64,000 nucleotides of DNA from the IMG/VR virus record IMGVR_UViG_3300030385_002649, positions 306,805 to 370,804 of that record. One strand, written 5' to 3'. The notes under the pieces were generated by a model, which had not been told where the DNA came from, ran no database searches, and saw nothing but the letters and a program-made list of their open reading frames with translations. How positions within the stretch are numbered: position 1 is the first letter of the stretch; every line of letters begins with the position of its first letter. Positions 16,021 through 49,200 of the stretch are shown piece by piece. Made by a program: the position numbers and the translations under genes.

Positions 16021-16024
16021 TTCG

Positions 16025-29477: not shown

Positions 29478-29771
29478 TCACTTCCTTGTTAAAGAGAATT
29501 TCATAACTATACCACGGAAAAAACCTCTCGCAATCGCACCTCTTACACACTGGGTCTCGCCAACTATAATGATTCCGAGAAGAATGGCCACACCGACAAG
29601 GTAAACTAAGTAATTGCATATCTTCGACAGATCCTAATTGCAGTATGACCGTTCAAGTGATAGACAGATCCTACTAGAAAACCAAGTGTTAAATTGACAC
29701 GAGACTTTGTTGTCACCACGGAACCAAGCTGAAGAGTGAGACATCCACGTCCTGCCGCACCGACAAGTCAT
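29467..29771 (-). CDS. Two CRC-WxS micro-proteins (29467-29619, 29634-29771), not in track
   Basis: MQLLSLPCRCGHSSRNH..CKRCDCERFFPWYSYEI; MTCRCGRTWMSH..CQFNTWFSSRI. Confidence 0.7.
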
Positions 29772-30679: not shown

Positions 30680-31142
30680 GTGAGTTGCCTTGCATTCTGT
30701 GGGCTAGTTGTGTATAATTTTCTGGATAGTCATAAGTTTTGACGTATTTGGCTACTAAATTGAGCCGAACACTATACCACAGGTTGAACCAATTGCCATC
30801 GGTCCCTCTCAGTTTGTCGCTGCCATCCATCATTGCGATTACCTGTTTTCTTTTGCCATTCTAGATCCTCTACGCCCGGCCGCCCTTAGCGCCGCACGCC
30901 TTTTAGAAAACAGCTGCAAACTGACCCAACAATAATTGGGCCAAGCAAGAGGATGAGGATGATAAGATGTCCTATCGGGATAGACGTGGCAGATGGCTGC
31001 AATTCTTCTATCCAATGTCGTTCATACGTTATTGAGCATCTGCATTTACATAGCTTCAATGAGTTTGCCCATCACATAAGCAAAAGCAGCGACTGCGGCA
31101 ATGGTTATAATAGCTTCTGGCCAACCCATAACAACTCTCCTG

Positions 31143-31652
31143 TTAAGCGTCAGATACGCCCGAGCGAACCCTTATTCTTTTTAAACTAAGGTCCATGTAC
31201 AACCGACAACTATACCACCTCTTAAAAACCTCACAATGAAACATTTCACACGGAAGAGGAGCATCAATACTAATAATATGACGATGACGGCTTAGGCTGT
31301 GATCGCACCTACAATCATTAAGATGATTTCTAAATATTAGCACTTAGAAATCCGAAAGTTCAGCCTAATAGCGTCGCTGAGCCAAGGTTTAAATTCGAAA
31401 CAAGAGCACATTCCTACTTTGCAATTCTCATTTCTAGAGAAATAAGAGTGTTCCTTATGAGAAGACCAAAACCCATGGCCACACCTACATATTTCAGATA
31501 AGAACATTTTCCGGTAGCCTCTTTAACGTTTTCAACACCCTCGACCTATTATACCAAATTATACCAGAACGCCACGGCCTAGATATGTGGGACATAAGCC
31601 CATGCCCATGTTCTTCCCATTTCAAGCCACATTTACAACGTGGGAAGTTCAT
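31143..31652 (-). CDS. Three CRC-WxS micro-proteins (31143-31343, 31337-31507, 31494-31652)
   Basis: CRCDH..WYS; MFLSEICRCGHGFWSSH..CKVGMCSCFEFKPWLS; MNFPRCKCG..WYN. Confidence 0.7.
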
Positions 31653-32029
31653 TCTGGTAGAGGGTCGAATTTAGGAATAATGCTGAGAATGTGCCCGTCG
31701 AAGTCAACAATATCGTCATCGAAACTACTAAGGATCTGAGCATGACGCTCCTCGGTTGACTTCTGAGAGTTTTTCACGATGAGGATCTCTAAACTATACC
31801 AAAATTCGTCGTCAGATCTGAAGAACTTCCTCTTCATAGCATCAAACGGCTCAATCATTTAATTGGAGCCTTGACATAAATCAAAAAACTATACCAACAA
31901 ATGTTGTTAGACTTGACGACAGTATCAGAAACGCGCATTTTAATCCTTCATAATCATTATCAACATTGCAGAATAACTAACGACAAACACGAAACAAATG
32001 AGCCCAAAAATTGTCACTTCACTCCTGGC

Positions 32030-34440
32030 GAAGTATGTTTCGAACGGTGCGCATTCAAGACCTTATGCTTGCTATGAGCATGACCAACCAGATAGCTAAA
32101 CCAACAACCAACTCTGGCTGGCCGACGCTTACCACACTTACAAGGAATTGGTTGCCTGATGAAAGCCTTACAGATGTTTTTGCCATACACTATCCTCTAG
32201 ACTCCCAACGGATGCAATAACTAAACCAACAAGCAGGCAAGGCGCTCAATGGCGTCATTATTGCACGAGCACCATTGATTGCGCATTTGCAATGGTTGTA
32301 AGCTTCAGAATCAAAATCGTTATAAAGCAGCAATGCGCAACAGTGTCTAATCATTAGGCGTTCTCTTCAGACCCAAAGACAAATCTTTTAAATTTTTTGA
32401 CCCTAGTGCTATACCAACAATCTCCGAACACAATATGGCCGCGACCAGTAGTAAGAATGCAGCACCGACAAAGAACGTCTGGACTCCTCATACGCCGCAC
32501 GCTTCTCTTTTAGCCTTTTTAGCTAGTTCTTTAGCACGACCATCATACCTTTTTACCCGCTGATCGTCGCCAACATGATAAGAAAACCACCTATTCCACC
32601 ATTCATAATTGCCGTTGTTCCTAGGGAGTATCATGTCGCCAGTTAGTCGCCAATTATCCATGATGCCAAAACCAAATCCTGAAAGAAATCCAACTTCTAA
32701 AATCCACACAGTTGCATTTAGGTGAAATACATTGATAATTGTCGGTGTTCTCATATTGAACCTTATGATAGTCGGAAGCATGGCTACACCGACAGTGAAA
32801 GGAAGAATCAAACCGACGTAGAATTCTTCCTTTCACGTCCACAAATTCATAGCACCGAATTTTTTCATCCGGTGAAGATTGCTATTCCGGACGACTAAAG
32901 ATTTTCTAGCAATAGCGTGAGAGTGCCAAGGCTTAAAGCTTTCGCACTCACAGCCCTCACCCAAACAAGTCCTCATGCCTTCGGTGGTGGTCACCCAATC
33001 ATGTTCAGCTTTTGTAGTATCAAGATAATACCATCTTTTAATGTCAGAGTGACCACACCTACATATCGTAATCATACTGTGGCTCCGAGTTTCCATGTGC
33101 GCCAAAAATGTCTGCGACAAATTCTATAGCTAAACCAACATTTAATAGTATAGTGCTGAGTCTCATAAAGATTTGGACATCTGCAGCCCATCATCGTGCT
33201 CATGGCCACAGCCTCTTCCATATCCCCGTTTGGCGGATCCGATAACTATGCCAACAAAATTTTGTATGGTGTGGCATAAAAACGTAAGAGCACCTACAAA
33301 TTCGGATCATATTGGTCCCAAACCCAAATCCTATAGCTATACCAACAACCAGCAAAAGAATGAGCACCTAGTAGTTTGTTTCTAGAGCCAAGTGGCATAT
33401 GTTGAGTCTCATAAAGATTGGGGCATCTACATTCCATTATTGTGCACAAACTTCTTCTATGCGGTTCGCAAGAGCCCTCAAATATCCAACTGCCTTTGTG
33501 CTGTCCGCGTCACTGATGATGGTGCAACCTTTATCCTTCAGTCTCTTGATTGACCCCCAGCTCTTCATTGAGCCGCCCATAGCGAACGTGAAAGAGAAAT
33601 CAGTCTTAACAAGATCTCCAGAATTTATGGTGAGATTCTTACCACACAACTTGTTAACATCACCAATTAAGCTCGGATCGTCAACTTCAATGAGAAGCTT
33701 AAGCTTGACAGACCTTTCAACGCTCTCCCACACTTGCTCACTATACCAGGCTCTCATGCGCACCAAACCTTGCTGTTAGGCCAATGACTACATCGACAAT
33801 TAACGCTCGGCTTGGGCGGAGAGTTAGTACTGCAAAAAAATCTTTAGTTCTACTCATTAAAAATCCTGTATGAGTACCAACAAGTGCCAGCCCAATGATA
33901 ATAAATTTCGGCTAGCCAAATCGGTCCCATATATGCCGTTTGACATCGACACCGAGGCAGCGCAACGTTGCTAACGGTCTCTTTCATAAAGTTTAGACCA
34001 TCTCCTCATCCGCGCAGCCTTTAACTTATTCTCGTTGATAAAATACGAATACCAACACCCATTAGTACGAGCAAAATGGTCCTCGTCCACCTTCCCACAT
34101 CTACAACGAAAGCTCACTGCCACCTCATCACAAAATGATGAAAATGGATTTTATTGCTAAACCACCAATTTCTTCTTCGAACAACGGTGTTAATACAAGC
34201 CATCTAACAACCTCTCCAAAACAGCGTCGGACCAAACTTGATAACTATACCAATAATTTAAAAAATCATGGCCACGGTCGGAGTGCTCCTTGCCACACCT
34301 ACAAGCTAAGACACCTTCCATATCCAACTCACTTTCAATTTATGGATTCTATAACTAAACCAGCAATCGCTTTCGGAACACCAATGATCATAAACAGTTA
34401 GCCATTTTCCTGATCTTCCGCATCTACAGGGAAAACTCAT
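32030..34440 (-). CDS. Cluster of mostly short-form CRC-x-H-x-CW(Y/F/H)SYRI micro-proteins (32190-32354, 32354-32491, 32654-32842, 32833-33075, 33072-33203, 33200-33310, 33294-33437, 33850-33987, 33971-34117, 34190-34321, 34306-34440)
   Basis: Manual translation; TAATG, ATGA and GTGA start-stop overlaps. Confidence 0.72.
33437..33766 (-). CDS. ~100-aa protein beginning with the WYS half-module (CRCSH lies upstream in another frame)
   Basis: MRAWYSEQVWES... Confidence 0.6.
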   Translation of the reverse strand: MVRMRAWYSEQVWESVERSVKLKLLIEVDDPSLIGDVNKLCGKNLTINSGDLVKTDFSFTFAMGGSMKSWGSIKRLKDKGCTIISDADSTKAVGYLRALANRIEEVCAQ

Positions 34441-34554
34441 CCGATTTTATTCTTGTAAGCGTTTCTTGCGGCTAAATTATGCTTAATTCTAGAACTAAAC
34501 CAGGGTTTATAAACAGGACAATCACACTTCCTACAACAAGCGAAATTGTAATCG

Positions 34555-34818
34555 TTATTGTCCATAATTCCACTTCAAAACAAGAGCGCTATACCACCAC
34601 CTATATTGCTTACGCCCGCAACCACAACGGCACATGCCTAGTCTCCCACTAAAACTTCTTCGCCTTAACCCTTGTGGTGGTTTCCAACTATGTCGGCTAT
34701 CAACATAAATATGACCACTAAACCAAAGCCTATATTGTTGACAATTACAATTGTAGCAATGATAAGTATTAATATGATACCGATGCAAGTTAACGTCATG
34801 CCCACATCTACAGTTCAT
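34555..34818 (-). CDS. Tandem two-module CRC-WxS protein
   Basis: MNCRCGHDVNLH..WFS....MCRCGCGRKQYRWWYS. Confidence 0.7.
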   Translation of the reverse strand: MNCRCGHDVNLHRYHINTYHCYNCNCQQYRLWFSGHIYVDSRHSWKPPQGLRRRSFSGRLGMCRCGCGRKQYRWWYSALVLKWNYGQ

Positions 34819-35161
34819 TAAAACCGATACTTTCGATCATGATGAATAAACCTACTAAACCACCAATTGTGATTCCCACATTCGCAACACGACACGGCCA
34901 GATGTGAGTCACGTTATCAACACCGGAGTGAAGGCCAATCGCGTGGCCGCACCTACATCCTCGTCCCACTCATCATAATCGCTTACCGCAAATGGACGCT
35001 GAATACCACACGCCCTATGCATCACAAGGACACCCGTCAGCTTTACACCGATACTGATAAGAATGAGGAATACTGCCAGCCGCCATATCAAAAGTCGACC
35101 ACACCATGTGAGGGCCAACAGCGTGACCGCAACGACAATCCCTCGCCCAATCAGCACTCAT
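34818..35161 (-). pseudogene. Two disrupted CRC-WxS copies: one frameshifted (~34818-34970) and one with an in-frame TAG at 35015-35017 (34973-35161)
   Basis: CRCGHAVGPH...CPCDA*GVWYS versus neighbour CPCDEWGVWHS. Confidence 0.6.
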
Positions 35162-37823
35162 TAGAGAACCTCGCCATAATAAATGCGATCAAGTTTCATT
35201 TTACTAAGCTTTTCCCTAATAATACACTCACTATGCCAAACCCCCCACTCATCACAAGGGCAATCAGAGGCTTGGCAAGCCATACTAATTTCTACACTAA
35301 CAATGCCATCACAACAAATATGATCGCCAACTCCATGATCGCAACGACATTTAGACATTTGGTAACGCCTTCGCCAGCCCCGCCAGCCTCTCCCTACAAA
35401 TCCTCAAACTGTACCACCACTTAAATCGAGCACACCGGCAAGACTTTTCCGAGCATAGAGAAGTGGGGGTGGGGCCGTTATAAGAAAGATCGTGGAAACC
35501 CCAATCATGCCCACAACGACACGCGTGTCTAACCACCGAATTATCGATCATAATCCGGCAACCCCCAAAAATTCAACGTCTTATAAATCTTCATACTGTA
35601 CCACCAACCATAACGCTTACAGTCACAAGACGCGCACGCATATGCGGACTGGCCACCAGCATGATGCTGAAACCACTCATGATCACACCTACATTTAGTT
35701 GAACCAGAAAGTCGCGCCATAGGTTTTAAATACCGTGTTGAACGCGAACTCATAAAATTTCCGCGATATACTCCTCGAAGCAGTACTGAACGCGTTAAAG
35801 ACCATTTCGAGTCTGATGCCTCCACTTACCCCGCCGCTTCGAGTACCACAAAGACCCACTAAACCCTAACTCTCAAGCTGTACCACCACCTTAAATAAAA
35901 GTCCGGATCACAAGACATTGTGCAAGCCACGGTCCCACCTTCTCATAGCGTCCGTTTCCATTGCTTTAACCGTTGCTTTAACCGCATCACATTCAATTTT
36001 CTCCCACATCCTAATCCTCTTAAACTTAAAACGAATCCGAAAACTAAACCAAAACACTCGCGTAACGTCACTTCTCATTCGAGATCTCCAAGCAACCTAC
36101 GGCGCTCACTGTTAGCATCTTGCAAAATAATGTTACTATACCAACCATTCCAATAATCACACTTAAGACAAATCACACACTTAACGCCCATGAGTCCACC
36201 TCGATGCAGGAGCTCTCCCTTGTGTGACGAGAAAGCACACCCACACCTACAAGTAAACCAGTTCCACGAAACAGATGGTTTAGCATTAGTCATACCAGTT
36301 TGCCATAATAACGCTTCAGATTGCGCTGGATATAAAAAACGCTCTTACTATACCAACTTCTAAAATTGTAACACTTACAAAGCGTACAGTTAGACTCACG
36401 AAGATCTTTAAACTTATGAGAATGCCAATAATGCCCACACCTACAAACCCTCACCGTTAATCGCCTCCCATTCCCTATGCTCCAAACGTCTTTTGTGCTC
36501 CACTAACCTTCTCGCGTACGTGGAAAATTAAATCATCTAATTCTACTACTATACCACGACACATATCTAGGACACCCACAGCGACACTCAACAGCGGAAC
36601 CAACATGCTGAAACCACCCATGTCCACACCTACAAGTCTTCATGGGTACCACTCCTCCATCTCCCTATGTGCCCCAACTATAACGCCTAGCCCAAACAGA
36701 ACGGCTAAACCAAGACTTAAAAGAATCACAAGTGCCCCAAGACCCATCCTGCTGATGGAACCGCCAAGCATAACCACACCTACAAACCGGAAATCTAAAA
36801 ACCCTATCGCCCATCACAGTCACCGCACCTAACCACCGCGCGTGCTGTTTTTCGTATACCTCGCCTTATTTCTTTGCGATATCTGAATCCCCCTACTATA
36901 CCACGCCTCATGAGACTCACAGTAACATATGTCACAAGCATACAAACCCGTCCCCGCCCCCCGAATCTTGCTATGTTCCCACCACTGATGACTACACCGA
37001 CAATTTCTAAAAGAATGATTACTCATTCCTGCAGCAAACAAGCCCTCAACCACAACCTAGCCGAGTACCACCTCTTAAAATCACACGGGACCAACTCACG
37101 ATGATGGGTAACAAACCCAAGACTACACCTACAACGACTCATAACCCCATAAACCTCATCCGCCAACTTAGCACAAGTATCACACTGGCACATCGCACAT
37201 CGCAAGAAGGCAATCCTGATAAAACCACCTCCCAGGACCACGATCCTTATCCCCAAATACTCGATCGATCTGAACCCGATGGCGCTCAAACTCGCGCCCC
37301 CTCTCGATCAAGTCCAAAACATCCGAATAGGGGGAGCTTTTAACCGACATATTGAACCAAAGCCCGAGTTGAACGCGACATTAGGAGTTCCTCCTGCTCG
37401 CCCACAACATAAACCCCACCATTCTAGAATACCAAGACCTAAACTCCCCACACTTACTAGCGCAACCGAGAACACCAGCACACACCCCACCCACGCTCCC
37501 CGGAAGAACATGACAAACCGACTTATGCCCACACCTACACACAACAGCCATTTCTCCTCCTCCTAATCTCCAAGGTCGCCTTCTTCACCCACCACACCTT
37601 ATGACTATACCAACAATGAAGAGTAGGATCCCCATGATAAAGAACATACTCAGACCAACCATGATTACGAGTATTAGTCCAAACATGACCACACCTACAC
37701 AAAATCGGGCGAGATCCTCTCATATATCCTCCTCAAACGAGCTAACCTACTAAACCAACAATTCCTAAGAAAAAGGTTAGTATCCCTCACTGAGTCATGA
37801 TCATAACCACACCTACAAATCAC
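35161..37823 (-). CDS. Eleven further CRC-WxS micro-proteins (35161-35358, 35351-35551, 35541-35720, 36075-36293, 36290-36454, 36533-36643, 36665-36814, 36829-37026, 37023-37142, 37381-37551, 37535-37723) plus 37695-37823
   Basis: For example 37381-37551 has SD GGAGGAG-aa-ATG, MAVVCRCGHKSVCH..SKCGEFRSWYSR; 36290-36454 VRVCRCGHYWHSH..CTLCKCYNFRSWYS. Confidence 0.75.
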
Positions 37824-38687
37824 AAGCCCACCTTGCCAACATGATAACGCTTACACCACCTAATGCGATTACTATACCACACATAGTCCAGCCACAACCT
37901 ACCCATTAGACAAACCGCGAATTATCAACCCAACCACAACGCCACCAAATATGCCTACTATACCACGCCCTCAACTTCATTAAAAATCCCTCATTATACG
38001 AATAATCCTACTATACCACAAGCTATGCGCCCCACAATGACAACAAGCATACGAGTAAAACTCACCAGCAGTGCTAACCCTAAGCTGAGACGACACAGGA
38101 GCAACAGAAAGCCTATAACACTCACAATTACCCAACATAAAAAGGAAGACTATTCTTCAAATTAACAAGAGAAGGCCAACGCGTCGTATAAACCAACATG
38201 TTCCGCCTCTGATCGTACCGAACGCGAGTCACCTCCTTAAAACAAAACCTCCCCAAAACCAGTTGCGTCTCAAGAGGATCCAAAGAAAACCACAACACAT
38301 AAGGACCATCCCCACCCTCAACACCCTGGCAAGACGCAATAGTATAAACCTCAGAAAAAGAGTTAAACCACTCAAGAACCCCACAAACCTCCGAATCCAC
38401 ACTCACACTCTTAGGCCGAAACAACACCTGCGAATGAGTAGCATCACCAACCTTAACCCTCATACAAACCTCCAACCCTAAAATACCAACAACTGCACGT
38501 GAGGAACGCACCTCCCGCCACTTCCAAAACTCCTCGCGCCGAAAAACAATATACATGTCACATACTGAACCCCCAAAAAACACACCCCCTCTCAAAAACC
38601 CCCACATGTACGGATAAGGTACACCCACCCCCTATGATTGCGTGATGAACGCGCTAATGTTCTATAATGAACCTCGCGCCGACTAGC

Positions 38688-38880
38688 GACCTGCCACCCC
38701 CCATAGGCACCCCGCGTGCCCACATGGCCGTACTCCACATGGCCGGAACCCCTCCCCCCGGGCCCAACCCCCAGAGTAGAACGGGGGTGTCGCCGGGCCC
38801 GCCGCGCGCGGGCGACACACCGGTGGCAGGGGGCATTCTAGCCCGAGCCAAGTGGCATGGACCAAGGGGAACCCATGCCA
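38688..38880. other. GC-rich nested inverted-repeat element at the transcription and skew switch point
   Basis: CTGCCACC..GGTGGCAG, GTGTCGCC..GGCGACAC, CCCCC..GGGGG, TGGCATGG..CCATGCCA; direct repeat CCACATGGCCG x2. Confidence 0.6.
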
Positions 38881-38916
38881 CTTTTTAAACCGTATCCCCA
38901 CAATTGGAGTATTACC

Positions 38917-39291
38917 ATGGCCGTTCAAATGCAAATCAAGATTGGCAAGCCCACCCTCACCCACTTCGCCACGCTGGAGAAGCTCGGGTACGCCCCCACC
39001 CAGGGGGAGGAGACCATCCGTTTCGAGGCCACGAAGGTCCACGCGGAGTTCGACCTCACGGGTGGGGACGTGCTGTCCCGCCTCAAGGCGTGCATCGCTG
39101 CGAAGGAGTGCTTCTCCTACAAGACGCGCTTCACGGTGGAGCGGGAGGGTGAGGCTCAGGTCCTCTTCTGCTTCCCCGCGTGTGCGGCCTTGGACCGGGT
39201 GGCGAAGGGCCTGAGTGCTCTCGTCGCCAAGCCTGTCAAGAAGGGGAAGAAGGTGGCTAAGGCTGCGTTCTCCCTGGACGACCTCGTCTAG
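38917..39291 (+). CDS. Paralog family A, copy 1 (C-terminal FSLDDL)
   Basis: LEKLGY.. and AAFSLDDLV; strongly C/G-ending codons. Confidence 0.8.
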   Translation: MAVQMQIKIGKPTLTHFATLEKLGYAPTQGEETIRFEATKVHAEFDLTGGDVLSRLKACIAAKECFSYKTRFTVEREGEAQVLFCFPACAALDRVAKGLSALVAKPVKKGKKVAKAAFSLDDLV

Positions 39292-39295
39292 TATT

Positions 39296-39322
39296 TGGCC
39301 AGGCCCCCTTAGGGCCTGGCCA
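39296..39322 (+). terminator. Hairpin TGGCCAGGCCC-cctta-GGGCCTGGCCA
   Basis: 11-bp perfect stem immediately after the stop codon. Confidence 0.7.
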
Positions 39323-39429
39323 TTTACCTATGTGTAGTAACAACTTTAGGCTATGGGGTTCCTCGTAGCACACCCGGTGAGTGATGATCCGTTTGGTGAT
39401 CCATTCTCGTAGCACACCCGTAGGAGGGA

Positions 39430-40338
39430 TTGATGGATAAGATGGTTGGAGAGTGTTGTGACATGGAGTTGGTGGCTTTGGGGGTGAAGGTCCTGGAGGC
39501 GGTCCCTGGGGAGTGCCCGTGTTGTGGTGACACGGGGACTGTTGAGGTCATCCAGGGTGAGAAGCGTTTCTTGCTTTGTGATGGGTGTCACCAGGAGCAG
39601 GTGGAGGCTGAGATCGACTCCAGGGAGTTGGAGTTGGAGTTGGAGTTGGAGTTCGCTGACGCCTTGGTGGACGACTAGTTGGTAAACTTAGAATTACCCT
39701 GGGTTCGGAACCCCGCTTCGATTGGCGTATAATCAATTGGTCAACTCACTGGCTGGACCATGTTCTCGTTCTTACAGGGCATTATTATGAGCGCGCTAGT
39801 GGATCCCCTGGGTTTTTCACTGGTGGGTTGGCCATTATCACTGGGAGGTTGACTGTGAGTCAGGTTCTTATTTTCGTGGCTCTTTGGGTCATAATGATTG
39901 TCTGCACGAATCGTGCGGCTTTGGCTAAGGCCAGGAGGGGGAGTGATGAAGCTCTTTAAGGTGGTGTGGGATTCTAAGGTTCCTAAGTGTCCGAACGCTA
40001 GCGCTGGATCGCTTAAGTGTGATTGTGTCAGCGGGTCGTGCATCAAGGAGGGGTTGGAGGGTCCGATCACGTCCTTGATCACTTGTGATGATTTTCTCTC
40101 GGCGGCGAGGATTATCATGGGTGCGTACAGTGACCACTTGCTCAAGGTCACTAATGTCCAGGAGGTTGCTTGCCCGATTGAGGCGGCGATGCTCGTGCGT
40201 GAGTTGAGGGGGTTGAGTTTCGACTTTCTCAACCCTGATCGTCGGGTGGGCTTGGAGCCAAGTGGTCTCGTGGAGGAGGATAAAGTTTATTTCCCTCCCG
40301 GTTGCGCCTGGGGGAGTGACTCGCCTTCTGTTTCTTAA
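39430..40338 (+). CDS. Two hypothetical genes (39430-39678 with CPCC..CDGC and a GGAGTT x5 repeat; ~39946-40338)
   Basis: Track ORFs with upstream GGAG. Confidence 0.55.
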
Positions 40339-40339
40339 A

Positions 40340-41525
40340 ACGGGGAAATAAACAGATCCCCTGCCTCCTAATATTCTGAGTTAGGTTCGAATATTAGTGA
40401 AGTAATTCTAACATTGGGCTTACCCCCTTAATGTTAGTGAGCCTGACGAGCGCCCCCTAATGTTAGTTGATTTTCTAGTCCTAATGTTAGGGGGGTAACG
40501 CGAATATTGGTGCGTGTACATGTGAAGTTCGCGCACGGTATTGTAATAACTCCTTGGTTCCAGAGTGAACAAAGAAAAAACCCAGGAGAACACCGAAACA
40601 CCAGGAACGTGCCCCAGGGTTCAAGCTTAAACTTCTACATACGCGAGAGGCTCCCAGAGCGCGGGAGAGGGAACGGGTTTCACCCCTATTATTTTCGTAT
40701 CGTTTTACATGTCGTTAATTTTCTTTTTTTGGGCCTCCAGTGTTCTGTGGGGTTTTTCTCCCCTTTAGTGTCTTGTTGGTTTCTTTTTTTCTCTCTTTTT
40801 TGTTGGGGGGTGTGTTGTGCGTCGTTTGCTTGTTCGTTTGTTTCTTGTGTTGAGGAGGTTGGGGCGGTGAGGTGAGGTGAGGTGAGGGTGGGATGGGGTG
40901 TGTTTCATCCTTTGATGTGTCTTGGGGTGGGGTTGTTTCCTTTTTCTTCGTAGGTGGGTGTTTTGTCCTTTTTTTGGGTGGGGCATTTGGGGTGTGAGTC
41001 CTTCGTGTTGTCCCTGCGTTTTGGGTTTTGTTTGTTAGGGGGGTTGTGGGGCCTTGTGTGGGGGTTTTGTGCTTTCTCGTGGTTTTTACGTGGTCGTGTA
41101 CATGTGAGGTTGTTTTTGGGTGAGTTGGTGATGTTGTTTTCTTTGGGTGTTGGGGTGGTTGGGTCGTTCCTGATCGTTTTCTTGGGGTTCGTGTTCGACT
41201 TGTAGGGGGAGGGAGGTGTTTGGGGGTTAGCCAAGTGGGTTCGCGTGATCGGGTGTTTTTTTTCTTTCTTGGGGTGTGGGGCGTTGTTGTTGGGGTGACG
41301 TTGTGTAGTGATTCTCCTTTTTTTCTTGTGAAGGGTGGGGTTCCGGGGTTTGAGGAGCTTGTGGTGGGGTTTCTTTATCGTCCGGGTTGGAGGGGTGGTA
41401 TTGTTCTTTGGACGTTTTCTGTTAACCTGGGGTTTGTTTTCTTTGGGTGGTTGGCGTTTTTTTTCTTGTCTGAGTGGTTGAGGGTGGTTGAGGGTGGTTG
41501 AGGGTGGTTGAGGGTGGTTGAGTAG
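40340..41525. other. Apparently non-coding, extremely G+T-rich region with short repeats; candidate origin or control region
   Basis: Bases 40801-40860 are 53/60 G+T; AATGTTAG x4; CGTGTACATGTGA x2; GGTGGTTGAG x4. Confidence 0.5.
41483..41522 (+). repeat. 10-bp tandem repeat GGTGGTTGAG x4
   Basis: Direct reading. Confidence 0.9.
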
Positions 41526-41807
41526 GGTTTTGTGCTCTGCTCGGCCCTTGACGTGTACAAGGAGGTGATAATGACTGGCGATGATCCCACGCTCTATGAT
41601 ATTGTTCGGTATCTGGGGCGTAGGCTGCAGTTGGCGACTTCTTTTAAGCTGGCTGGTCACTCGACTGGGTTGGCTGAGGAGGTTGGGCCTCTGCAGTTGG
41701 CGTTCGATGCTCTGGTTCCTCTGATTGAGTCGGAGGAGGCGAGTATGCAGGGTGGTTCGGAGGAGTGACTGCTTAGTTTGTGGGTGTTCTAGAATAACCC
41801 TCGCCTT

Positions 41808-41880
41808 GGTCCCGTAGCTCAATGGATAGAGCAATCGCCTTCTAAGCGATCGGTTGTGGGTTCGAATCCCGCCGGGACTA
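41808..41880 (+). tRNA. tRNA-Arg(UCU)
   Basis: Cloverleaf; anticodon loop cttctaa; GTTCGAATC T-loop; no encoded CCA. Confidence 0.93.
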
Positions 41881-42718
41881 TCTGATTGGAGGTGACTTAT
41901 GGTGTCGCTACAACATGTGAGGACGCAATCGTTGCGTCATTTTCGGGAGAAGCCTATTGGCAAGAATGGTTACTATTTGACCGTCTTGCTGAAGGGAGTC
42001 CCGGTGGTTCGGGCTGTGATCTCGAAGGGTTTGGCTTTGGCCGTGGTGGCTGAGGTGATGGGTGGTAGGATGAACATGTGTCGTCCCTCGGTCTCGTTCG
42101 GCATGGTGGACAAGTCGTGGTGCAAGATTGGCCCGACCTGTTTGGTGGAGCGTCGTGACTCCGGTGGGGTGGAGAGTTTCTTCGTCGTGACGGTTCTTCC
42201 GGCGTGAGTGGGCTGAAGATGGTCCTTCTTGGGGATCTTGAGGTCGGTCGGACTTTCACGACTTGTGGGTCTTTGTTTGAGAAGGTGGGCCTTGGTCCTT
42301 CTGATCAGACGGTGGCGGCGAAGCGGATGGACTCGGGTCGGGAGGTTGTGACGATTTTTCCGGCTGGGGTTGAGGTGGAGGTTTCGCCTCGGTTGGATCA
42401 CTGTATTGGGGAGGCTAATGTCGCTAGTTCGACTGATCCAGTGCGGGTTTTCTGTGTGGATGACGTGGTTCGAAATGCTCTCGACACGGTGACGTTCTTG
42501 AAGGCGCAGAAGAAGAAGATGTCGATACTTCAGATCTATGGGGTGCTTGATGCTCTGTGGGAGAAGACGGCCTCGGCGAGTTTGGTTAAGCGGTAGCTGC
42601 TTTAGTGCTGGGGTGCGAATCCTCCCCTTGTCGTCTGGGGTCATAGACATTTTTTTAAGCCCCCTCATCGTTAGCCAAGTGGGGTGGGTAAACCGTAGGC
42701 TGAATTTGGAGAATTGGT

Positions 42719-43255
42719 ATGATGGATTTCTTGAAGAGCGGTATGGGTTCGTTGGTTGACCTGGCGAAGCGTCAGCAGAACGCTGCTCGTTTGGGCGACA
42801 TGGGTGTGACTCGGATTCGTGCGGCTCGGCTGGTTGCCTTGAACAGCCCGATCATGGTGCCCAAGAAGGGGCTCCTCGACGCGGACGGCAAGGAGATCAA
42901 GTCGGACGAGATGGTCCAGGCTGGCTGGAAGCCGAAGAAGGTCATCGTCGAGCGCTTGGACGCGGACCTCGCCTACCTCGGCGACATCTCGATCTGGGCT
43001 GGTGAGATCGGGATCTCGGTTCCGACGCCGAAGTCGGTCCTGTCGACGGGTGTGATCACCTGCGACGAGGGGCTGACCTGTCCGGAGCTGGTCCTCAACG
43101 AGGCTGAGGGTGACGACCTGATCATCCTCCCGACCCTCGGCGTCCTGGCGTTGGAGGCGTTCGACTCCGGGCTCCAGGTGATCCCGGTGAGTCCTTCCTT
43201 CACGGGTGACGCTGGGGGTTTGTCCCTCTGCCACGTGCGTCGCGTCGTTAAGTAG
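42719..43255 (+). CDS. Hypothetical protein with high-expression-type codon bias
   Basis: Track ORF, 178 aa; predominantly C/G-ending codons. Confidence 0.75.
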   Translation: MMDFLKSGMGSLVDLAKRQQNAARLGDMGVTRIRAARLVALNSPIMVPKKGLLDADGKEIKSDEMVQAGWKPKKVIVERLDADLAYLGDISIWAGEIGISVPTPKSVLSTGVITCDEGLTCPELVLNEAEGDDLIILPTLGVLALEAFDSGLQVIPVSPSFTGDAGGLSLCHVRRVVK

Positions 43256-43417
43256 GGCTTCCTTCGCTAGCTTTGGGATAGCTAGTCATTAAATAATCAT
43301 CTTGGCGAAGCGGCATGGGTTTTTGGACTTGTGTTGCTCCTTTCTCTTTTCTGGAGGATTATTATGAGCTTCTAATGGAAACATTGGGCCTGCTGCTTGT
43401 TGTGGTGGGTTGCTTCC

Positions 43418-43489
43418 GGATCCGTAGCTCAATGGTAGAGCAGTGGCCTTTTAAGCCATGGGTTCAGGGTTCGAGTCCCTGCGGGTCCA
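43418..43489 (+). tRNA. tRNA-Lys(UUU)
   Basis: Cloverleaf; anticodon loop cttttaa; GTTCGAGTC T-loop. Confidence 0.93.
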
Positions 43490-43770
43490 TTTGGTGGCAG
43501 TATTGCGCCGTAGAGTTGATCAGTTAGCGTTGCTTTGGTAATGACGCGGTCGTTATCTTGAGCCAAGTGTGTGGAGTCCTCTCATTTGGGGCGTTGAAGC
43601 ATGCTGGTTGTCGCACGGGGGCTCCAATCCCGCTGATGGGTGGTACCGGGATCCCGGTAGGGTTCTGAGAGAAGATACCGGTTATTGTCAACTCGCCATC
43701 ATTTTTTTTGTTGAACTCATTGTGGGTTCTGCGCTTGTTTTGGGTTTTACATGTACACAGGAAGTGAAGT

Positions 43771-45046
43771 ATGTTGTTGAAGAAGGCTGTCGAGGACCGT
43801 AAGGTTCGAGATGCCACGAAGCAGAGGCACACGGATCGCCAAAAGGAGTTGTTTCTTTTGGCGATCCCGTTGAAGGAGCGAATCCTCGTTTTCTTAGAGG
43901 AGAACTTCTTGGAGTTGGACAGAACACAGTTCAGCTTCCAAAACGGAGATGAGGAAAGGAAAAAGACCTGGGATCGCCTTAGGTCTTGCAGACTTCGAGT
44001 TGACGACGTCGAGGTTGACGTTCGGGATCTCGATTTCAGCGAAGACGGCAGTCCGAAAACTCCTAAGATCGAGAAGAAAACCTATTGGATTGATCTTGAT
44101 CGCCGTCATGGTGATTGGGTGACCCATGAGGTGACTGGGGTTAAGACTTGGGTCCCAGAGAATCGCCTCAGTATCCAGTGTGGGCGCGCCATGTTCTGTA
44201 GGTCATTGCATTTGGTGAACGTCATGAGGGCTATCCTCGGTGATCCGGCTCCAGTGAACTGGACGGGTCAGGTGAAGTCAGCCAGGGCGGCCTTCAACGC
44301 GCTTCCTGAGGATCAGAGGGTGATTCTCATGCGGGAGTTCTTGGCAGCATTGTGAGCCAAGTGGGTGCGATGCTGGACTTGATTCCAGTTGTTGCTATGG
44401 GGGTGGTTCTCATGGCTTTTGTGTTTTTTATGGCCAGTCGTTACCTTTAGGAGGGTTTATGGATTTGGGTCAATTGGCGAAGGTGGCGGGAACGCTTAAC
44501 CTTCTGTATGAGCAACACTTGCAGTTCGGTCAGGACTACGAGGACGCTCTCGTGGAACTCGACGAGTTCGACAAGAAGGGAATCTTGAATGAGATGACCT
44601 TCCCGATGGTTGCTCCTCGGGACTGGTTCGAACAGAAGCGTGATCGGGATGCTGAGTACGGACAACTTCGGGAGGCTTACGGCACCCTGAAGAAGGACTG
44701 GGACTCGGTTAACGCTCGTGCTGACGATTACGAGGAGGACCTTGGTACTCTTCGGGAGCACGCGGAGCGTGTGTCATTGGTCTCGCGGTCGCTCCAGGAC
44801 GCTTTGGCTAGGGCTCGGAACCAGACGGTTCGGGCTACGCTGAAGCTATGGTTGGCTGATGGGCCTCCCCCTGCGGTTGAGGCGGCGTTGCTGGCGGAAC
44901 GTTCGGTCGAGGCTATCAAGTGGGCTTTCCATGAGTACCTCCTCGACTTAGAGTCGGCTAAGAGGTTGATCCGGTCGTATAGTACGGCGCGGGTCGCGGA
45001 TCTTCGGAAGGCGCCTACGGTTCTTCTGACTGTGGCGCAAGTCTAG
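43771..45046 (+). CDS. Two hypothetical genes (43771-44355, 44459-45046)
   Basis: Track ORFs; SD AGGAGG before 44459. Confidence 0.7.
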
Positions 45047-45078
45047 CAGGCTTCCTCTCTGCTAAACGGTTTTTGGTT

Positions 45079-45146
45079 AAGCTTGTGGTCTAATAGTAAG
45101 GCAACCTGTTCGCAGGGTGATCTGGGTGCGATTCCTAGCTGGCTTG
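45079..45146 (+). ncRNA. tRNA-like element whose anticodon arm is closed by a UUCG tetraloop
   Basis: Acceptor aagcttg/ctggctt; D arm gtct/aggc; cctg-ttcg-cagg; T arm ctggg-tgcgatt-cctag. Confidence 0.45.
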
Positions 45147-45620
45147 TGTCTCTTTCTCAATAATTGGGCGGTTACTGAGAAGGTTAACTTTGTACGCCCT
45201 CGTACTCTCAGGAGTTTTTACCATGAAGAAGCAGAACAACAACCGTCGTGTCAGCCGGACCATTGATGAGATTGATCGGAACGCTCAGCCCGAGCGCGAG
45301 GAGAAGATCCTCGGCAAGGTGGAGCACAAGATGCTCGGCCAGGTCCTCCCGATTCTCGCGGTCATCGACAACGGCGGTGCCTTCCTCGTCGAGCACAAGA
45401 AGTTCGACCGGAGCTACGTCCGAGCGCGCAAGCGCAACGGCGAGTACGTCACCGACCCGAAGGGGAACACCCTCTTCGAGCGCGTCAACGTCTACCGCTA
45501 CGTGAACGAGGAGCGCCTCACGTCGGCTGGTTGGGTCCGGATCAAGTAGGTCCTCGACCATCGTTCGGTCAGCCCCTTCGGGGGCTGGCCCTTCATCAAC
45601 CACAAGAGAGAAAAAACACC

Positions 45621-46223
45621 ATGAACTCATTTAACAAGAAAACGAAAGTATCGGCATCGACGGATTATATCAATCGCGTCAATTGGCTCGAACAAAGCAA
45701 CGCAGCTAAGTACGAACGCATCAAGGCCCTTGAGGCGGACAACCTCGAACTTACTGAGATGGCTGCGCGCGGCTGCTCGCCTGATGAGCACAAGATCAAC
45801 GTGTTCATCGGCCAACTCAAGGCCGAGAAGGCAATGTTGCGCAAGGAGTGCGACGACCTCAAGGCTCAGCTTCAAGAGCCCGTAACCCTCGCAATCGAGG
45901 TCGTCAAGCTGAAGTCCTTGCGCATGGACGACGCGAAGCGAAGCGATCTCCTTCGTCAAGAATTCGTGCTTGAGCAACGCAAGGTCCACGCTATCCAGTT
46001 GGCACATCGGGTTGAGAGGCAAGCCCTACTCGCTCAGTTGGAGGTGGCTAAGTGCCAAGCCAAGTCGTCGCCACAGGAGCCCGAGTACGATTCCTCGGTT
46101 CTTAGTGGGGACAACAAGGCTGACATCGCCCTCGCCTCGATCATGGCTGCGACCGGCCAGACCGCCATCCGGTGGATCTCCGTGGCGACCGCTGTGGCTA
46201 GCGGTTTCTACTGCATGGTGTAA
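45621..46223 (+). CDS. Coiled-coil protein with C-terminal membrane anchor (family B)
   Basis: C-terminal ADIALASIMAATGQTAIRWISVA resembles that of 61333-62292. Confidence 0.7.
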   Translation: MNSFNKKTKVSASTDYINRVNWLEQSNAAKYERIKALEADNLELTEMAARGCSPDEHKINVFIGQLKAEKAMLRKECDDLKAQLQEPVTLAIEVVKLKSLRMDDAKRSDLLRQEFVLEQRKVHAIQLAHRVERQALLAQLEVAKCQAKSSPQEPEYDSSVLSGDNKADIALASIMAATGQTAIRWISVATAVASGFYCMV

Positions 46224-46225
46224 GA

Positions 46226-49200
46226 TGCACACCAAGCAACTTCTAGCTAAAAAAGAGATCCTCACCGCCTTGACGCAAGCTGTCCTGGCGGGAGTTAACG
46301 TCTCTTGTAACAATTGTGCCAGCCTCACTCCGACTGACATTTGTGTGATGGCTGAGTCTCAAGACAACACTCCAGTTGAAGACTCATTGGCGTTTGCCAC
46401 GGACCGTGAGAACTGGGAGGCGAGTTTTTTCATAGCCAAGCCTCATGAGTTCTTCTGTCCTCAGTTCCGACTTAAGCTTGGTCCTGACGGCGTGATTCCG
46501 CTAGGTTTCCCGGCTCGGTTGCTCCCATTGGCGGAGGGTTAGCCAAGTGGTGCCGCCCGATAAGTTGTTTCCTCCGCCTCCTCGGTATAAAATCCGGGTG
46601 GTTCAACGGAGGACTGGCAGAACGAAAGAAACCGAACTATACGACGGCCCAAAGGCTGCTCGGCTGTACGGAGAACTAGGTGACAAGTTCACCGTTGAGA
46701 AAGGCTACGACGTGAAGGTGATTGATGTTGAACCGTGAACGATGGTCTGTGGGCATTAACGATGTCTATATGACTGCAACAATCATGAAAGAGGAGGGCC
46801 GGTTCTACTGGTTCTTCTTGGAGTGGGTGTCCGCGTGGGCTGCTCACTTAGTCATGAAAATCCCGGTGATTAAGACCAAGAAGGTCGACGAGGATGGCGA
46901 GCCCTACGAGTTCCTCCAAGACTGGTTTTGGTGTGAGAAGTACACGCTCTTCTTCCAGTGGATTCACGGGAAATATAAGGTTAGCCAATTCAGCGCTGAT
47001 CTTCAAGACGTTCCGAAGACTTGGCATGACTCGGAGCTAGTCGATGATGATCCACCGTTCGAAAAGCCGGGCTTGGTAATCGCTTATGGTCGGTTTTCTG
47101 AGGCGCGACGTCTTGAGCGGTCGGCTAGGCTGAATCGGATGGCCGCTGCTAACGAGGTAATCGGGATGGTCCGCAGTGGACGTCCGTTGCCTGAGATGCC
47201 GTGGTAACGAGGCTGTAGTTTCGGAGGATTTTCAATCCTGTCCTGGCGAACATGGGGTCTTATGATCTCGTGTCCATTTCTTTTTAAGGTCCCCGATTCA
47301 CTGGGTCGGTCGGGATAGCCATTTTTTGTAGACCCTAACTTGGAGATTTGTTATGAGTGATGTTGTTATCGGACTGATCATGGTCCAGAAGGCTACCATC
47401 GACGGCGACACTGTGAAGTGGAAAACGTTCAAGCCGACCTCTGGCCACGGTGCTTTCCTGAAGCGCCTCGGCTACACGGTTCGGGACGAGCTGCTCGTCC
47501 AGGACAAGGGTAAGTACCTTCAAGTGGAGTGCGCCGGTTTCGAGGTCGTTCAGGTCGACACTTCGCTCACGGGCGATGCTGGCCTCGAAGAGGTGGCCAA
47601 GCTCAAGAAGGTCATCGCTGAGAAGAAGCTGATCAGCTACCCGAGCCAGAACGGGTCGCAGTTCTCCTTCATGGGGAGCGACGGCACCGTGAACAGCGGC
47701 AAGGCGTCCAAGATGCCTGGCGCTGTTCGGTACCTCGACCGAGTGGTCCCCGGATGCTCGGCCCTGGTCGCCAAGCGGGCTGACAAGCAGAAGACCCGTA
47801 AGGTTGTCGAGTCGACGTTCAGCTTCGACGACCTCTTCAGCGACGACGACGACAAGGACGCCAAGAAGGCCGCTCCCGTCAAGAAGAAGAAGTAAGGGTA
47901 TCAGAGGACGGGTGGTTTAGGCCGCCCGTCCTCTCCCTCTTATGAAGAGACACATGGTGGTTGCTGACGAGGAAGGTGGCGGCATAAGGGGCTATCGAAG
48001 CCAAGTGGTGTTCATGCTCCCCCGTTACATTTCAGACAACCTAAACTCGAAAAGCGTGCGCGCTTACCTAGATATGATGTTGGCGGACAGTCCGCTGTTC
48101 GTGCCTTCGCTTAATGTCGAAGTGATCGAATTCGAGGGGAATATAATCCTTCCTCTTGACGCGTCAGACTGGATCAGCGGATGAAGTCACTTCGTTATCT
48201 CCCACGAGAGGAACTCGACAACCTTTGTCAGGCTGTAAGAGAGGAGATCATTCGCAGGGACAAAATAGCCCTCGCGGATTACCCTATCCCGCAGGATATT
48301 CTGGTCATGTATCATCAGGGTGGTAACAAGGTCCAAGCTCTGAGGGCCTTTCGGGACTCCTTGCCAACCCCAAAGCCTAGCTTAAGCGCTCTTAAAGCGA
48401 CGCTAGACACTAGGAGGCCAAGTTAAGCGTGGCCGGACTTGATCTAATGCACGAAGGGCTGTGCCCGAACTGCGGAAATGTGTTGGTGCGAATACAGGCT
48501 AATCACCCGCGTTGTACTAGCTGTGGGGGCACTGCAACCAAGATCGTCCCCGTGACAGGATTTGCGGCTTCTATGGGATTTGGGTGCAATGGGTGTGAGT
48601 ACTGTCAGCTTCCGAAGGAAGATTAGTCACCGATCCTGGACATGATTAGAAACTGTCCTTAATAACTGATCAGGTGTTTTAGGCTGCGCCTGGTTGGATA
48701 AATCTTAGCCTTTAACTCGTACCTCATGGAGAATTTGAAATGAGAAACCGATTCGAGAAGCAACTTCGTATTCAGCACATCAAGGGCAACCAGAGCGGAA
48801 AGGTCGCACGTGTCGGGCGCCGAGAGGCTGACCGTCTGGTTGGAGAGGGTTCGGCCCGCTTCATCAGCCAGTCCTTGTTCAAGGCTGCTAACGTTGGCAT
48901 CGACATCACTCGCCTCGCCAACTCGCGCGACGACAAGACGATCAAGAAGCAGATCAAGCAGATCACGGCGCAGGCAAAGAAGCAGACCAAGAAGGCTGAG
49001 GCCACCGCATAATGCGACCGAAAGTTCAGTCTGGTGCCAATATTATTCTGTCCATCTTCGGAGGGTGTGCGCTTGGGATGTTGTTGATGACCCTCATCCA
49101 CGATCACAAAGATGAGGCTGAGGCGGAAAAGACCAAGGAACAGAAGCTGTTCAAGGCCGACAGGTGGCGCATGGTAAAGATCAACGAGCGGCCCGTTCAG

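What the first reader, a model, noticed from the sequence alone, without database searches (positions are those of the whole stretch)
38630..38920. Structured switch point where gene direction and G+T skew both invert
Left of about 38.75 kb the plus strand is A/C-rich and genes are on the minus strand; to the right it is G/T-rich and genes are on the plus strand. The flip lies in a ~190-nt GC-rich element with nested inverted repeats (CTGCCACC/GGTGGCAG about 130 nt apart, GTGTCGCC/GGCGACAC, TGGCATGG/CCATGCCA), followed by the first AGCCAAGTGG. It is a candidate bidirectional origin, a junction of physical genome ends, or a structured RNA.
Basis: partly seen in the sequence, partly recalled or inferred. 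Interest (0 to 1): 0.65.

Follow-up and report, generated by a model that had tools for sequence, protein, structure and literature searches.

The report
Early-gene control hub of jumbo phage
The flagged spot is the conserved, GC-rich control region at the head of the early genes of an uncultured 371-kb marine phage; genes run outward from it in both directions, it is flanked by an unusually steep strand bias, and it is a good but unproven candidate for a T4-style replication origin.

Summary
The window is the last 64 kb of a circularly assembled 370,804-bp marine jumbo myovirus with T4-like packaging genes. The 452-bp gap at 38,464-38,916 separates the first leftward gene from the first rightward gene. 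It holds the whole-genome minimum of cumulative GC and keto skew. It also holds the only stretch in 371 kb with at least 74% GC over 120 nt.

Genome-wide, the skew simply follows gene direction and comes from G-rich first codon positions. Within about 10 kb of the switch there is an extra bias at third codon positions (G>C, T>A on the coding strand). It decays with distance, and a relative with unrelated genes shows the same decay.

The gap aligns with two relatives. Shared blocks are two ATGAAC boxes, CCACAT(A/G)GCCG repeats found nowhere else in either genome, and the region of the first AGCCAAGTGG. In the relatives the repeats sit just upstream of sigma-70-like promoters.

Best reading: a divergent early-transcription control region. 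It resembles T4 oriE (iterons, an early promoter, transcriptional divergence), so an origin role is plausible at about 0.4 but untested. Physical ends are unlikely. A conserved structured RNA is not supported.

The parts
38464..38916 (.). Divergent intergenic gap of 452 bp between the first leftward gene and the first rightward gene. This is the switch itself.
   Evidence: ORF lists, translations and ribosome-binding sites read from the sequence. The cumulative skew minima lie at window 39,001 and 39,059.
38128..38463 (-). First leftward gene (111 aa, P0002), an orphan.
   Evidence: no relatives in viral contigs and no match above the curated cut-off in Pfam or PHROGs.
38917..39291 (+). First rightward gene (124 aa, P0001), an orphan with a basic C-terminal tail.
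   Evidence: it matches only itself among 5.8 billion proteins.
38685..38874 (.). GC-rich island, up to 77% GC per 120 nt. It is the only such island in the 371-kb genome.
   Evidence: Relatives G001 and G002 carry such islands at their own cumulative GC-skew minima.
38642..38676 (+). Conserved box pair: GTGATGAACGCG, then 12 nt, then AATGAACCTCG. In this phage only, it overlaps TTGCGT-N19-TATAAT (38,638-38,668).
   Evidence: Alignment with G002 and L088. A degenerate second copy of the module lies at 38,498-38,542.
38720..38745 (+). Two CCACATGGCCG repeats with 15-nt spacing. A degenerate third copy lies at 38,602-38,614.
   Evidence: The same 11-mer (A or G at position 7) occurs 7 times in G002 and 3 more times in L089, only at the switch.
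38781..38824 (+). GC-rich hairpin (GTGTCGCC / GGCGACAC arms), nested inside the 9-nt pair 38,690-38,698 / 38,822-38,830.
38846..38855 (+). First AGCCAAGTGG of the rightward block, a promoter-like 10-mer. It aligns with CCGAGTGGC(A/C) just before the ribosome-binding site in G002.
38850..38886 (+). Terminator-like hairpin with an 11-bp perfect stem and a 12-nt loop, followed by T5. Its 5' arm overlaps the 10-mer.
   Evidence: repeat I4. (dG -19.5 kcal/mol, z = -3.46, 0 of 200 shuffles fold as well).
25859..38138 (-). Leftward arm: about 39 tightly packed tiny paralogous genes (CRCGH...C.C.C...W[YF]S). No internal promoter motif was seen, so it is probably one long early operon.
26500..47500 (.). 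Zone of excess third-codon-position keto skew on the coding strand. It is strongest next to the gap and fades over about 9-12 kb on each side.
   Evidence: Left arm GC3 skew is 0.56, 0.27, 0.11, 0.11, -0.03 per 3-kb bin. Right arm is 0.28, 0.28, 0.05. TA3 skew runs from 0.64 down to about 0.15.
40360..40500 (+). A+T-rich non-coding stretch with three TAATGTTAG repeats and inverted copies. These are possible protein-binding sites.
40700..41560 (+). Stretch of about 860 nt with 82% G+T, many G-runs and no convincing ORF. It contains one AGCCAAGTGG (41,229) and ends in a tandem repeat of a 10-nt unit, 4.9 copies.

Best explanation
The element is the control region at the head of the early genes of a T4-like marine jumbo phage. 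Two early transcription units leave it in opposite directions. Leftward runs a roughly 12-kb string of about 39 tiny paralogous genes. Rightward runs a GC-richer block punctuated by the phage-specific 10-mer AGCCAAGTGG.

The gap carries a repeated module of two ATGAAC boxes and CCACAT(A/G)GCCG repeats. I take these to be binding sites for a regulator of early promoters, which is an inference. After them come a GC-rich leader and a terminator-like hairpin that overlaps the first 10-mer.

The skew inversion has two layers. The first is shown: the genome-wide GC skew follows gene direction because first codon positions are G-rich, so the cumulative minimum falls where direction flips. The second is also shown: an extra bias at mostly synonymous third positions (fewer C and A, more G and T on the coding strand), steepest at the gap and gone after about 10 kb. 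I infer that this second layer is a footprint of C-to-T deamination. The footprint would arise on the non-template strand, which is left single-stranded most often next to very active early promoters. By analogy with T4 oriE and oriF, those same transcripts may also prime replication (R-loops). I put that extra origin role at about 0.4.
For: Genome identity: a 370,804-bp virus record assembled as a circle, carrying portal, sheath, RIIA, DNA polymerase and a T4-like TerL.

Direction and skew: gene direction and skew coincide at every switch point. GC3 skew is near zero elsewhere while GC1 skew is +0.3.

Local gradient: the third-position gradient is seen in G000 and again in G002, whose left arm holds a different gene family. 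It is absent at the other divergent point, 250.4 kb.

Conserved blocks: sequence blocks in the gap are shared with G002 and L088. In those relatives the repeats lie directly upstream of a G-run followed by TTGCGY or TTGACG, 17 nt, then TACAAT or TCTAAT. This arrangement recurs before three successive transcription units, which is how promoter-associated operator or activator sites are laid out.

The 10-mer: AGCCAAGTGG lies mostly at gene boundaries, 13-70 nt before start codons. All copies in the rightward block, which begins at the gap, lie on the + strand. G001 has its own directional motif over the syntenic block, ending next to its switch.

Uniqueness: there is a single GC island in G000, and G001 and G002 have islands at their own skew minima.
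Against: No promoter in the G000 gap meets even a relaxed sigma-70 consensus. The best candidate has a 19-nt spacer.

No RNA data exist, so no transcription start or gene timing has been observed. 'Early' is inferred from gene content and position.

No phage RNA polymerase or sigma factor was found that could read the 10-mer.

The third-position bias could instead reflect selection, for example C-poor transcripts that escape Rho, or replication.

G001 has the GC island but neither the repeats nor the gradient.
Confidence: 0.6

Rival explanations
1. The region is a replication origin of the T4 type, either in addition to its promoter role or as its main role. A transcript from an early promoter beside an iteron cluster would form a persistent RNA-DNA hybrid on the strongly G-rich non-template strand and prime leading-strand synthesis outward. 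The displaced strand would stay single-stranded longest near the start, which would give the decaying keto skew on both sides.
For: T4 oriE, oriF and oriG lie where transcription diverges and composition shifts. oriE has direct repeats conserved in syntenic regions of relatives and depends on an early promoter (PMC3016281).

At this site there are: the global skew minimum; repeats confined to the site and conserved in G002 and L089; a once-per-genome GC island in three relatives; and an 860-nt non-coding stretch that is 82% G+T with G-runs and an internal 10-mer, 2 kb downstream. Contig depth in run X2 is 450-458 over 38,621-41,503, against 285 on the left and 185 on the right.
Against: Third-position GC skew is about zero over the rest of the genome, so there is no replichore signal. 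There is no A+T-rich unwinding element in the island, which is 66-77% GC. There is no excess of DnaA boxes. In G002 and L089 the repeats recur before each of three promoters, which fits regulation better than a single origin. The depth figures are per-contig means that the tool itself warns against interpreting. G001 lacks the gradient.
Confidence: 0.4
2. The left edge of the conserved element (about 38.6 kb) is a physical genome end, and 38.6-41.5 kb is a direct terminal repeat that assemblies collapse. The first genes to enter the cell would then sit just inside that end.
For: Unitig depth in X2 roughly doubles over 38,621-41,503 and is about 160-185 immediately to the left. The 1-kb relative contig L088 ends 14 nt before the ATGAAC boxes. 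Early genes at the leading end are usual for phages with fixed ends (my own knowledge: T7, T5, SPO1).
Against: A 57.7-kb Logan contig, a 217-kb ENA contig and the JGI contig all cross the site without a break. The breaks in X2 are low-frequency single-letter variants and tandem repeats. TerL groups with T4-like terminases, which in T4 package by the headful without fixed ends (my own knowledge). The end overlaps of G000 and G001 are 46 and 127 nt, which are assembly overlaps. Contigs cannot show read starts.
Confidence: 0.1
3. The GC-rich element is a structured cis-acting RNA: a leader, attenuator or anti-terminator transcribed from the TATAAT at 38,663 and ending in the hairpin plus U-run.
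For: The 211-nt fold has z = -2.6. There is a strong hairpin followed by U5, 31 nt before the start codon. Leaders in G002 and L088 are also GC-rich and fold strongly.
Against: There is no Rfam match at E up to 1. RNAalifold on four homologous leaders gives -4.4 kcal/mol with a covariation term of +0.19. The conserved blocks are direct repeats, not paired arms. The promoter that would make this RNA is weak and specific to G000.
Confidence: 0.1

Closest known systems
Phage T4 oriE (and the promoter-dependent origins oriF and oriG)
   Same: It sits where transcription switches strand and base composition shifts. It has a cluster of short direct repeats conserved in the syntenic region of related phages. 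It lies next to an early-type promoter. Small early genes of unknown function are encoded alongside. The genome has T4-like core genes (PMC3016281).
   Different: There is no sequence similarity. [quoted passage not shown] In the relative the repeats recur before three promoters. Origin activity is untested. No steep third-position skew gradient is mentioned for T4 in the review I read.
Host-takeover early modules behind strong early promoters, as in SPO1, T5 pre-early genes and T4 early regions (my own knowledge)
   Same: There are dense strings of very small orphan genes directly downstream of the first promoters. They are lineage-specific and fast-turning: G000 and G002 carry unrelated families in the same position.
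   Different: Here one family is amplified about 39-fold in tandem. The module is paired divergently with a second block that has its own 10-mer signal. No terminal redundancy has been shown.
GC-skew 'origins' called in huge phage genomes from metagenomes
   Same: This is a circular jumbo genome whose cumulative GC skew has one deep minimum in an intergenic region. This is the criterion used in PMC7162821.
   Different: Here the skew can be decomposed. The genome-wide part is gene orientation acting through first codon positions, and only a local 20-kb part lies at synonymous sites. The usual inference from skew alone therefore does not hold.

Membership tests
T4-type promoter-dependent origin (oriE/oriF/oriG) | Lies at a point of transcriptional divergence with a shift in strand composition | tested here: met
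   The criterion is taken from PMC3016281.
T4-type promoter-dependent origin (oriE/oriF/oriG) | An early or middle promoter whose transcript enters the origin | tested here: inconclusive
   Sigma-70-like promoters are present in G002 and L088. In G000 there is only TTGCGT-N19-TATAAT and the 10-mer, and the consensus scan found none. No RNA data are available.
T4-type promoter-dependent origin (oriE/oriF/oriG) | A+T-rich unwinding element downstream of the promoter (oriF/oriG) | tested here: not met
   The island is 66-77% GC. The nearest A+T-rich stretches are about 35 nt before the start codon and at 40,330-40,420.
T4-type promoter-dependent origin (oriE/oriF/oriG) | Cluster of short direct repeats conserved in syntenic regions of relatives (oriE) | tested here: met
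   CCACAT(A/G)GCCG has 2 exact copies in G000 and 7 plus 3 in G002/L089, and is absent elsewhere in both genomes.
T4-type promoter-dependent origin (oriE/oriF/oriG) | Origin activity (local copy-number peak early in infection, or autonomous replication of a cloned segment) | not testable with these tools
   Only per-contig depth is available: 450-458 against 185-285. The tool warns against interpreting it.
Bacterial-type bidirectional (theta) origin | Replichore-wide mutational skew that is independent of gene direction | tested here: not met
   GC3 skew on the coding strand is about 0 to -0.08 in all four orientation blocks. The sign on the + strand changes with gene direction.
Bacterial-type bidirectional (theta) origin | Cluster of DnaA boxes | tested here: not met
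   15 matches in the window at up to one mismatch, against 13.8 expected, and none in the gap. The host is unknown.
Fixed genome ends (direct terminal repeat, cos or pac) | Reads do not cross the site, or start there in a pile-up, with a twofold coverage step | tested here: inconclusive
   Contigs cross the site. Read starts cannot be seen in contigs. A depth jump exists but is unreliable.
Fixed genome ends (direct terminal repeat, cos or pac) | Terminase of a type that cuts at fixed sites | tested here: not met
   The best TerL matches are T4-like myoviruses at 25-29% identity. That T4 terminase packages by the headful is my own knowledge.
Known structured RNA family | Match to a curated covariance model, or covariation among homologues | tested here: not met
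   Rfam returned only two tRNAs in 30-46 kb. RNAalifold showed no covariation support.
Intrinsic terminator or attenuator | Stable GC-rich hairpin immediately followed by a U-run | tested here: met
   38,850-38,883 followed by T5, dG -19.5. Function is untested.

The most novel reading that the evidence does not exclude
The switch is a once-per-genome initiation zone where divergent early transcripts form long R-loops and prime replication. The displaced strand would be left single-stranded long enough, generation after generation, to write a deamination footprint that fades over about 10 kb. If so, both the position and the mechanism of replication initiation in uncultured T4-like jumbo phages could be read directly from synonymous-site skew.
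Probability: 0.25. Interest if true: 0.7.

Novelty: new variant of a known kind. Interest (0 to 1): 0.5.

Why it matters
Origins in huge phage genomes from metagenomes are routinely called from cumulative GC skew alone. Here the deep minimum is mostly a gene-direction effect, so that inference needs checking one codon position at a time.

Separately, the site carries a conserved, locus-specific repeat cluster and a steep bias at synonymous sites. The bias is also present in a relative whose flanking genes are unrelated. That points to a real strand-specific process (very heavy early transcription, R-loops or initiation of replication) that could be tested with existing Tara Oceans reads.

The site also marks where this phage family keeps its fast-evolving arsenal of tiny early genes.

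Tried and rejected
- **Relatives through the flanking proteins.** None were found in viral contigs. P0001 and a member of the tiny-gene family match only themselves among 5.8 billion proteins. Pfam and PHROGs gave no match above the curated cut-off for ten flanking proteins.
- **DNA similarity to cultured phages.** Only the tRNA matched. The 1,613-aa neighbouring protein had no match.
- **Phage transcription machinery.** No single-subunit RNA polymerase, no multisubunit DFDGD motif and no sigma region 2 were found in the genome.
- **AGCCAAGTGG in five relatives.** Absent in all of them.
- **Iteron-pair pattern in viral contigs.** Five of six hits were chance matches inside coding regions of unrelated GC-rich phages.
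- **ATGAAC-box pattern in metagenome contigs.** Three of six hits were unrelated.
- **The 293-kb record behind L089.** It is not held, so the right arm of that relative could not be read beyond 2.4 kb.
- **Alignment of the G001 gap to G000.** No convincing homology; only the shared GC-rich character. The first genes of G000, G001 and G002 are not detectably related.
- **Copies of the gap elsewhere in the genome.** None, so the depth jump is not caused by an internal repeat.
- **The 10-mer as a loop of hairpins.** This holds for only 5 of 28 sites, against 1.6 at random positions. It is a minority arrangement, not the rule.
- **AlphaFold2 on the tiny-protein family.** Mean pLDDT was 68, too low for a fold search.

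Full report
**What the window is.** The window is bases 306,805-370,804 of a single 370,804-base virus record. It comes from a marine (Tara Oceans) metagenome. The ends of the record overlap by 46 nt inside an 18-nt tandem repeat, so it is a circular assembly, not evidence of real ends. PHROG scans identify a jumbo myovirus: RIIA, NAD ligase, portal, large terminase, tail sheath, DNA polymerase, helicases and ribonucleotide reductase. The terminase is closest to those of T4-like phages at 25-29% identity and carries an intein-like insert. I found no phage RNA polymerase and no sigma factor.

**Checking the observation.**
- The three inverted repeats are there.
- The GC-rich element spans 38,685-38,874.
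- AGCCAAGTGG at 38,846 is the first of a run of + strand copies. One stray copy lies at 33,386, a number expected by chance.
- In 2-kb windows, GC skew goes from -0.45 to +0.35 and AT skew from +0.23 to -0.38 across the site.
- Over the whole genome, the cumulative GC-skew minimum is at window 39,001 and the keto minimum at 39,059.
- The six most keto-poor and six most keto-rich 1-kb windows of the genome all lie within 3 kb of the gap, on opposite sides.
- Gene direction flips in a 452-bp gap (38,464-38,916) between an orphan gene of 111 aa on the - strand and one of 124 aa on the + strand.
- The element is the only stretch in 371 kb with at least 74% GC over 120 nt.

Its predicted folding is only moderately better than that of shuffled sequence (z = -2.6 as RNA, -2.2 as DNA). 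The exception is the last hairpin: an 11-bp stem with dG -19.5 and z = -3.5, followed by five T.

**The skew has two layers.** Gene direction and skew change together at every switch point of the genome, at about 88, 250, 281 and 345.6 kb. Splitting by codon position shows why. Away from the switch, the coding strand has a GC skew of about +0.3 at first positions and about zero or slightly negative at third positions. The V-shape of the cumulative curve is therefore a consequence of gene orientation, not a replication footprint.

Near the switch a second signal appears at third positions. On the left arm the coding-strand GC3 skew is 0.56, 0.27, 0.11, 0.11 and -0.03 in successive 3-kb bins, and the TA3 skew is 0.64, 0.41, 0.38, 0.36 and 0.14. 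On the right arm GC3 is 0.28, 0.28 and 0.05, and TA3 is 0.64, 0.62, 0.35 and 0.23. Non-coding DNA shares the bias: 40,700-41,560 is 82% G+T. The other divergent point, at 250.4 kb, shows no such gradient.

**What lies on each side.** The left arm (25,859-38,138, - strand) is packed with about 39 tiny genes of one family with the pattern CRCGH...H...C.C.C...F..W[YF]S. The genes often abut or overlap, and no recurring upstream motif was seen. This suggests a single long operon started in the gap.

The right arm is GC-richer (54%) and carries AGCCAAGTGG mostly at gene boundaries, 13-70 nt before start codons. There are 28 copies on the + strand, running from the gap through the record's end to 60 kb, and one on the - strand. 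The motif is a single 10-nt block followed by five mostly non-A positions, with no second element. About 1.5-2.7 kb to the right of the gap lie an A+T-rich repeat cluster and the G+T-rich non-coding stretch.

**Relatives.** The flanking proteins have no relatives, so I reached kin through the portal protein. This gave G001 (395 kb, complete, 52% portal identity) and G002 (185 kb, 65% identity, part of a 293-kb contig seen as L089). A DNA pattern then found L088, a 1-kb contig.

- *G002 and L088.* They align with the G000 gap in discrete blocks: the two ATGAAC boxes, the CCACAT(A/G)GCCG repeats, and the region of the first 10-mer. The repeats occur 7 times in G002, 3 more times in L089 and twice in G000, and nowhere else in either genome. 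In G002, L089 and L088 they sit just upstream of a G-run and a sigma-70-like promoter (TTGCGY or TTGACG, 17 nt, then TACAAT or TCTAAT). In L089 the arrangement recurs before three successive transcription units. G000 lacks that promoter; the aligned hexamer is TAGAAC.
- *G002 left arm.* It is a tandem array of a different small family, yet it shows the same third-position gradient: GC3 of 0.62, 0.33 and 0.18, and TA3 of 0.66, 0.48 and 0.45.
- *G001.* It is not alignable and has no gradient. It does have a GC island at its own skew minimum. It also has its own directional motif, 25 copies on the block strand, over the syntenic block that ends beside its switch.

**Interpretation.** The layout in the relatives (repeats, G-run, promoter, GC-rich leader, ribosome-binding site, reiterated before each unit) is that of a promoter with operator or activator sites. 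Together with the divergent genes, this makes a divergent early-transcription control region the best-supported reading (0.6).

The local bias has the direction expected from cytosine deamination of the strand left single-stranded, which is the non-template strand in transcription and the lagging-strand template in replication. This mechanism is summarised in the abstract of PMC2031905, listed. I read the gradient as a mutational footprint of very frequent opening of the DNA next to the early promoters. Selection for C-poor transcripts is an alternative I could not exclude.

**Is it also an origin?** The T4 review (PMC3016281) states three things. oriE, oriF and oriG lie at regions of transcriptional divergence that coincide with shifts in compositional bias. 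oriE contains direct repeats conserved in syntenic regions of relatives and depends on an early promoter. oriF and oriG work through R-loops made from a promoter transcript. The present site matches the first two descriptions, and its non-template strands are exceptionally G-rich, which favours R-loops (my own knowledge). Contig depth in one run is higher over 38,621-41,503 (450-458) than on either side (285 and 185; about 170 in the two 60-nt unitigs at 38,560-38,650).

Against an origin:
- There is no A+T-rich unwinding element in the island.
- There are no DnaA boxes.
- There is no replichore-scale signal.
- The repeats are reiterated at several promoters.
- The depth figures are contig means that the tool warns about.

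I put the origin role at about 0.4. It is compatible with the promoter role.

**Ends and RNA.** Three independent assemblies cross the site. The breaks seen in the deeper run are rare single-letter variants and tandem repeats. The terminase type argues for headful packaging. Fixed ends are therefore unlikely (0.1), though only raw reads can settle it. For a structured RNA there is no Rfam hit and no conserved structure among four homologous leaders. The terminal hairpin plus U-run may stop upstream transcription, while transcripts starting at the overlapping 10-mer would escape it. That mechanism is my inference.

**Novelty.** The kind of element (an early promoter and iteron region at a transcriptional divergence in a T4-like phage) is known. 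The conserved GC island, the particular repeats and the steep synonymous-site gradient are not described in the papers I could find. I rate it a new variant of a known kind, with interest 0.5.

Noticed in passing
window 25,859-38,138 (- strand); also genome 49.9-72 kb and scattered sites: About 39 tandem copies, plus about 9 dispersed, of a tiny Cys/His/Trp-rich protein family (CRCGH...H...C.C.C...F..W[YF]S, 36-100 aa). There is no Pfam or PHROG match. The family is absent from five relatives, and a profile search of 5.8 billion proteins found only this phage. The AlphaFold2 model has mean pLDDT 68, with a short zinc-knuckle-like start and a C-terminal helix.
   Followed up: partly
window 38,846-62,317 and genome 670-60,413 (+ strand): AGCCAAGTGG occurs 28 times on one strand over about 86 kb, mostly just before genes. 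It is a single 10-nt block with no -35 or -10 partner, and no phage RNA polymerase or sigma factor was found. Relative G001 has a different directional motif (25 copies) over the syntenic block. In 5 of 28 sites (3 of 25 in G001) the motif sits in the loop of a hairpin of 6-11 bp.
   Followed up: partly
window 40,700-41,560: A stretch of 860 nt with 82% G+T (A 7%, C 11% by my arithmetic), many G-runs and no credible ORF. It has an internal 10-mer at 41,229 and ends in a 10-nt unit repeated 4.9 times. It resembles an R-loop-prone zone or a G/U-rich non-coding RNA gene.
   Followed up: no
window 40,360-40,560: An A+T-rich non-coding cluster with three direct TAATGTTAG repeats, inverted copies and AATATT palindromes. 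There is also a 12-nt repeat (GTGTACATGTGA) that occurs here and again at about 41,096.
   Followed up: no
window 38,560-41,503 (run X2): Logan unitig depth is 285 (left 54.8-kb contig), about 160-185 (two 60-nt unitigs at 38,560-38,650, each with a rare single-letter variant), 450-458 (38,621-41,503) and 185 (right 20.5-kb contig). The cause is unexplained. It could be origin-proximal over-replication, a collapsed terminal repeat, sharing between strains or bias.
   Followed up: partly
L062 54-3,236 (- strand), 3,406-3,663 (+ strand) (G002, 180-183.7 kb): In the same position as the G000 tiny-gene array, relative G002 carries a tandem array of an unrelated family of about 90-125 aa ending in a DPxFFxxL motif. 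One inverted copy lies next to the conserved element.
   Followed up: no
L062 3,650-5,177 and L089 11,000-13,358: In G002/L089 the whole unit (repeats, promoter, GC-rich leader and a 132-141-aa gene starting MFEK) is tandemly duplicated. A third repeat cluster follows. L088 has a homologue of the same gene.
   Followed up: partly
genome 165,747-169,439 (L009 5,747-9,439, - strand): The large terminase is 1,230 aa. Its ends match T4-like terminases, and its middle (residues about 330-760) matches intein-bearing DNA polymerase genes of Bacillus and Staphylococcus phages. It probably contains an intein.
   Followed up: no
window 63,704-64,000 and genome 1-75: The record opens and closes in coding tandem repeats: a 9-nt unit in 12 copies and an 18-nt unit in at least 3.5 copies. 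IMG/VR's label 'direct terminal repeats' rests on this 46-nt overlap.
   Followed up: yes
window 41,807-41,882 and 43,418-43,489: tRNA-Arg(TCT) and tRNA-Lys(TTT) genes lie among the first rightward genes.
   Followed up: no
window 14,999-30,679: Auxiliary genes lie left of the tiny-gene array. By eye they resemble thymidylate synthase, peptide deformylase, a GDP-sugar epimerase/reductase, a macro-domain protein and a histone-deacetylase-like protein. No family scan was run on them.
   Followed up: no
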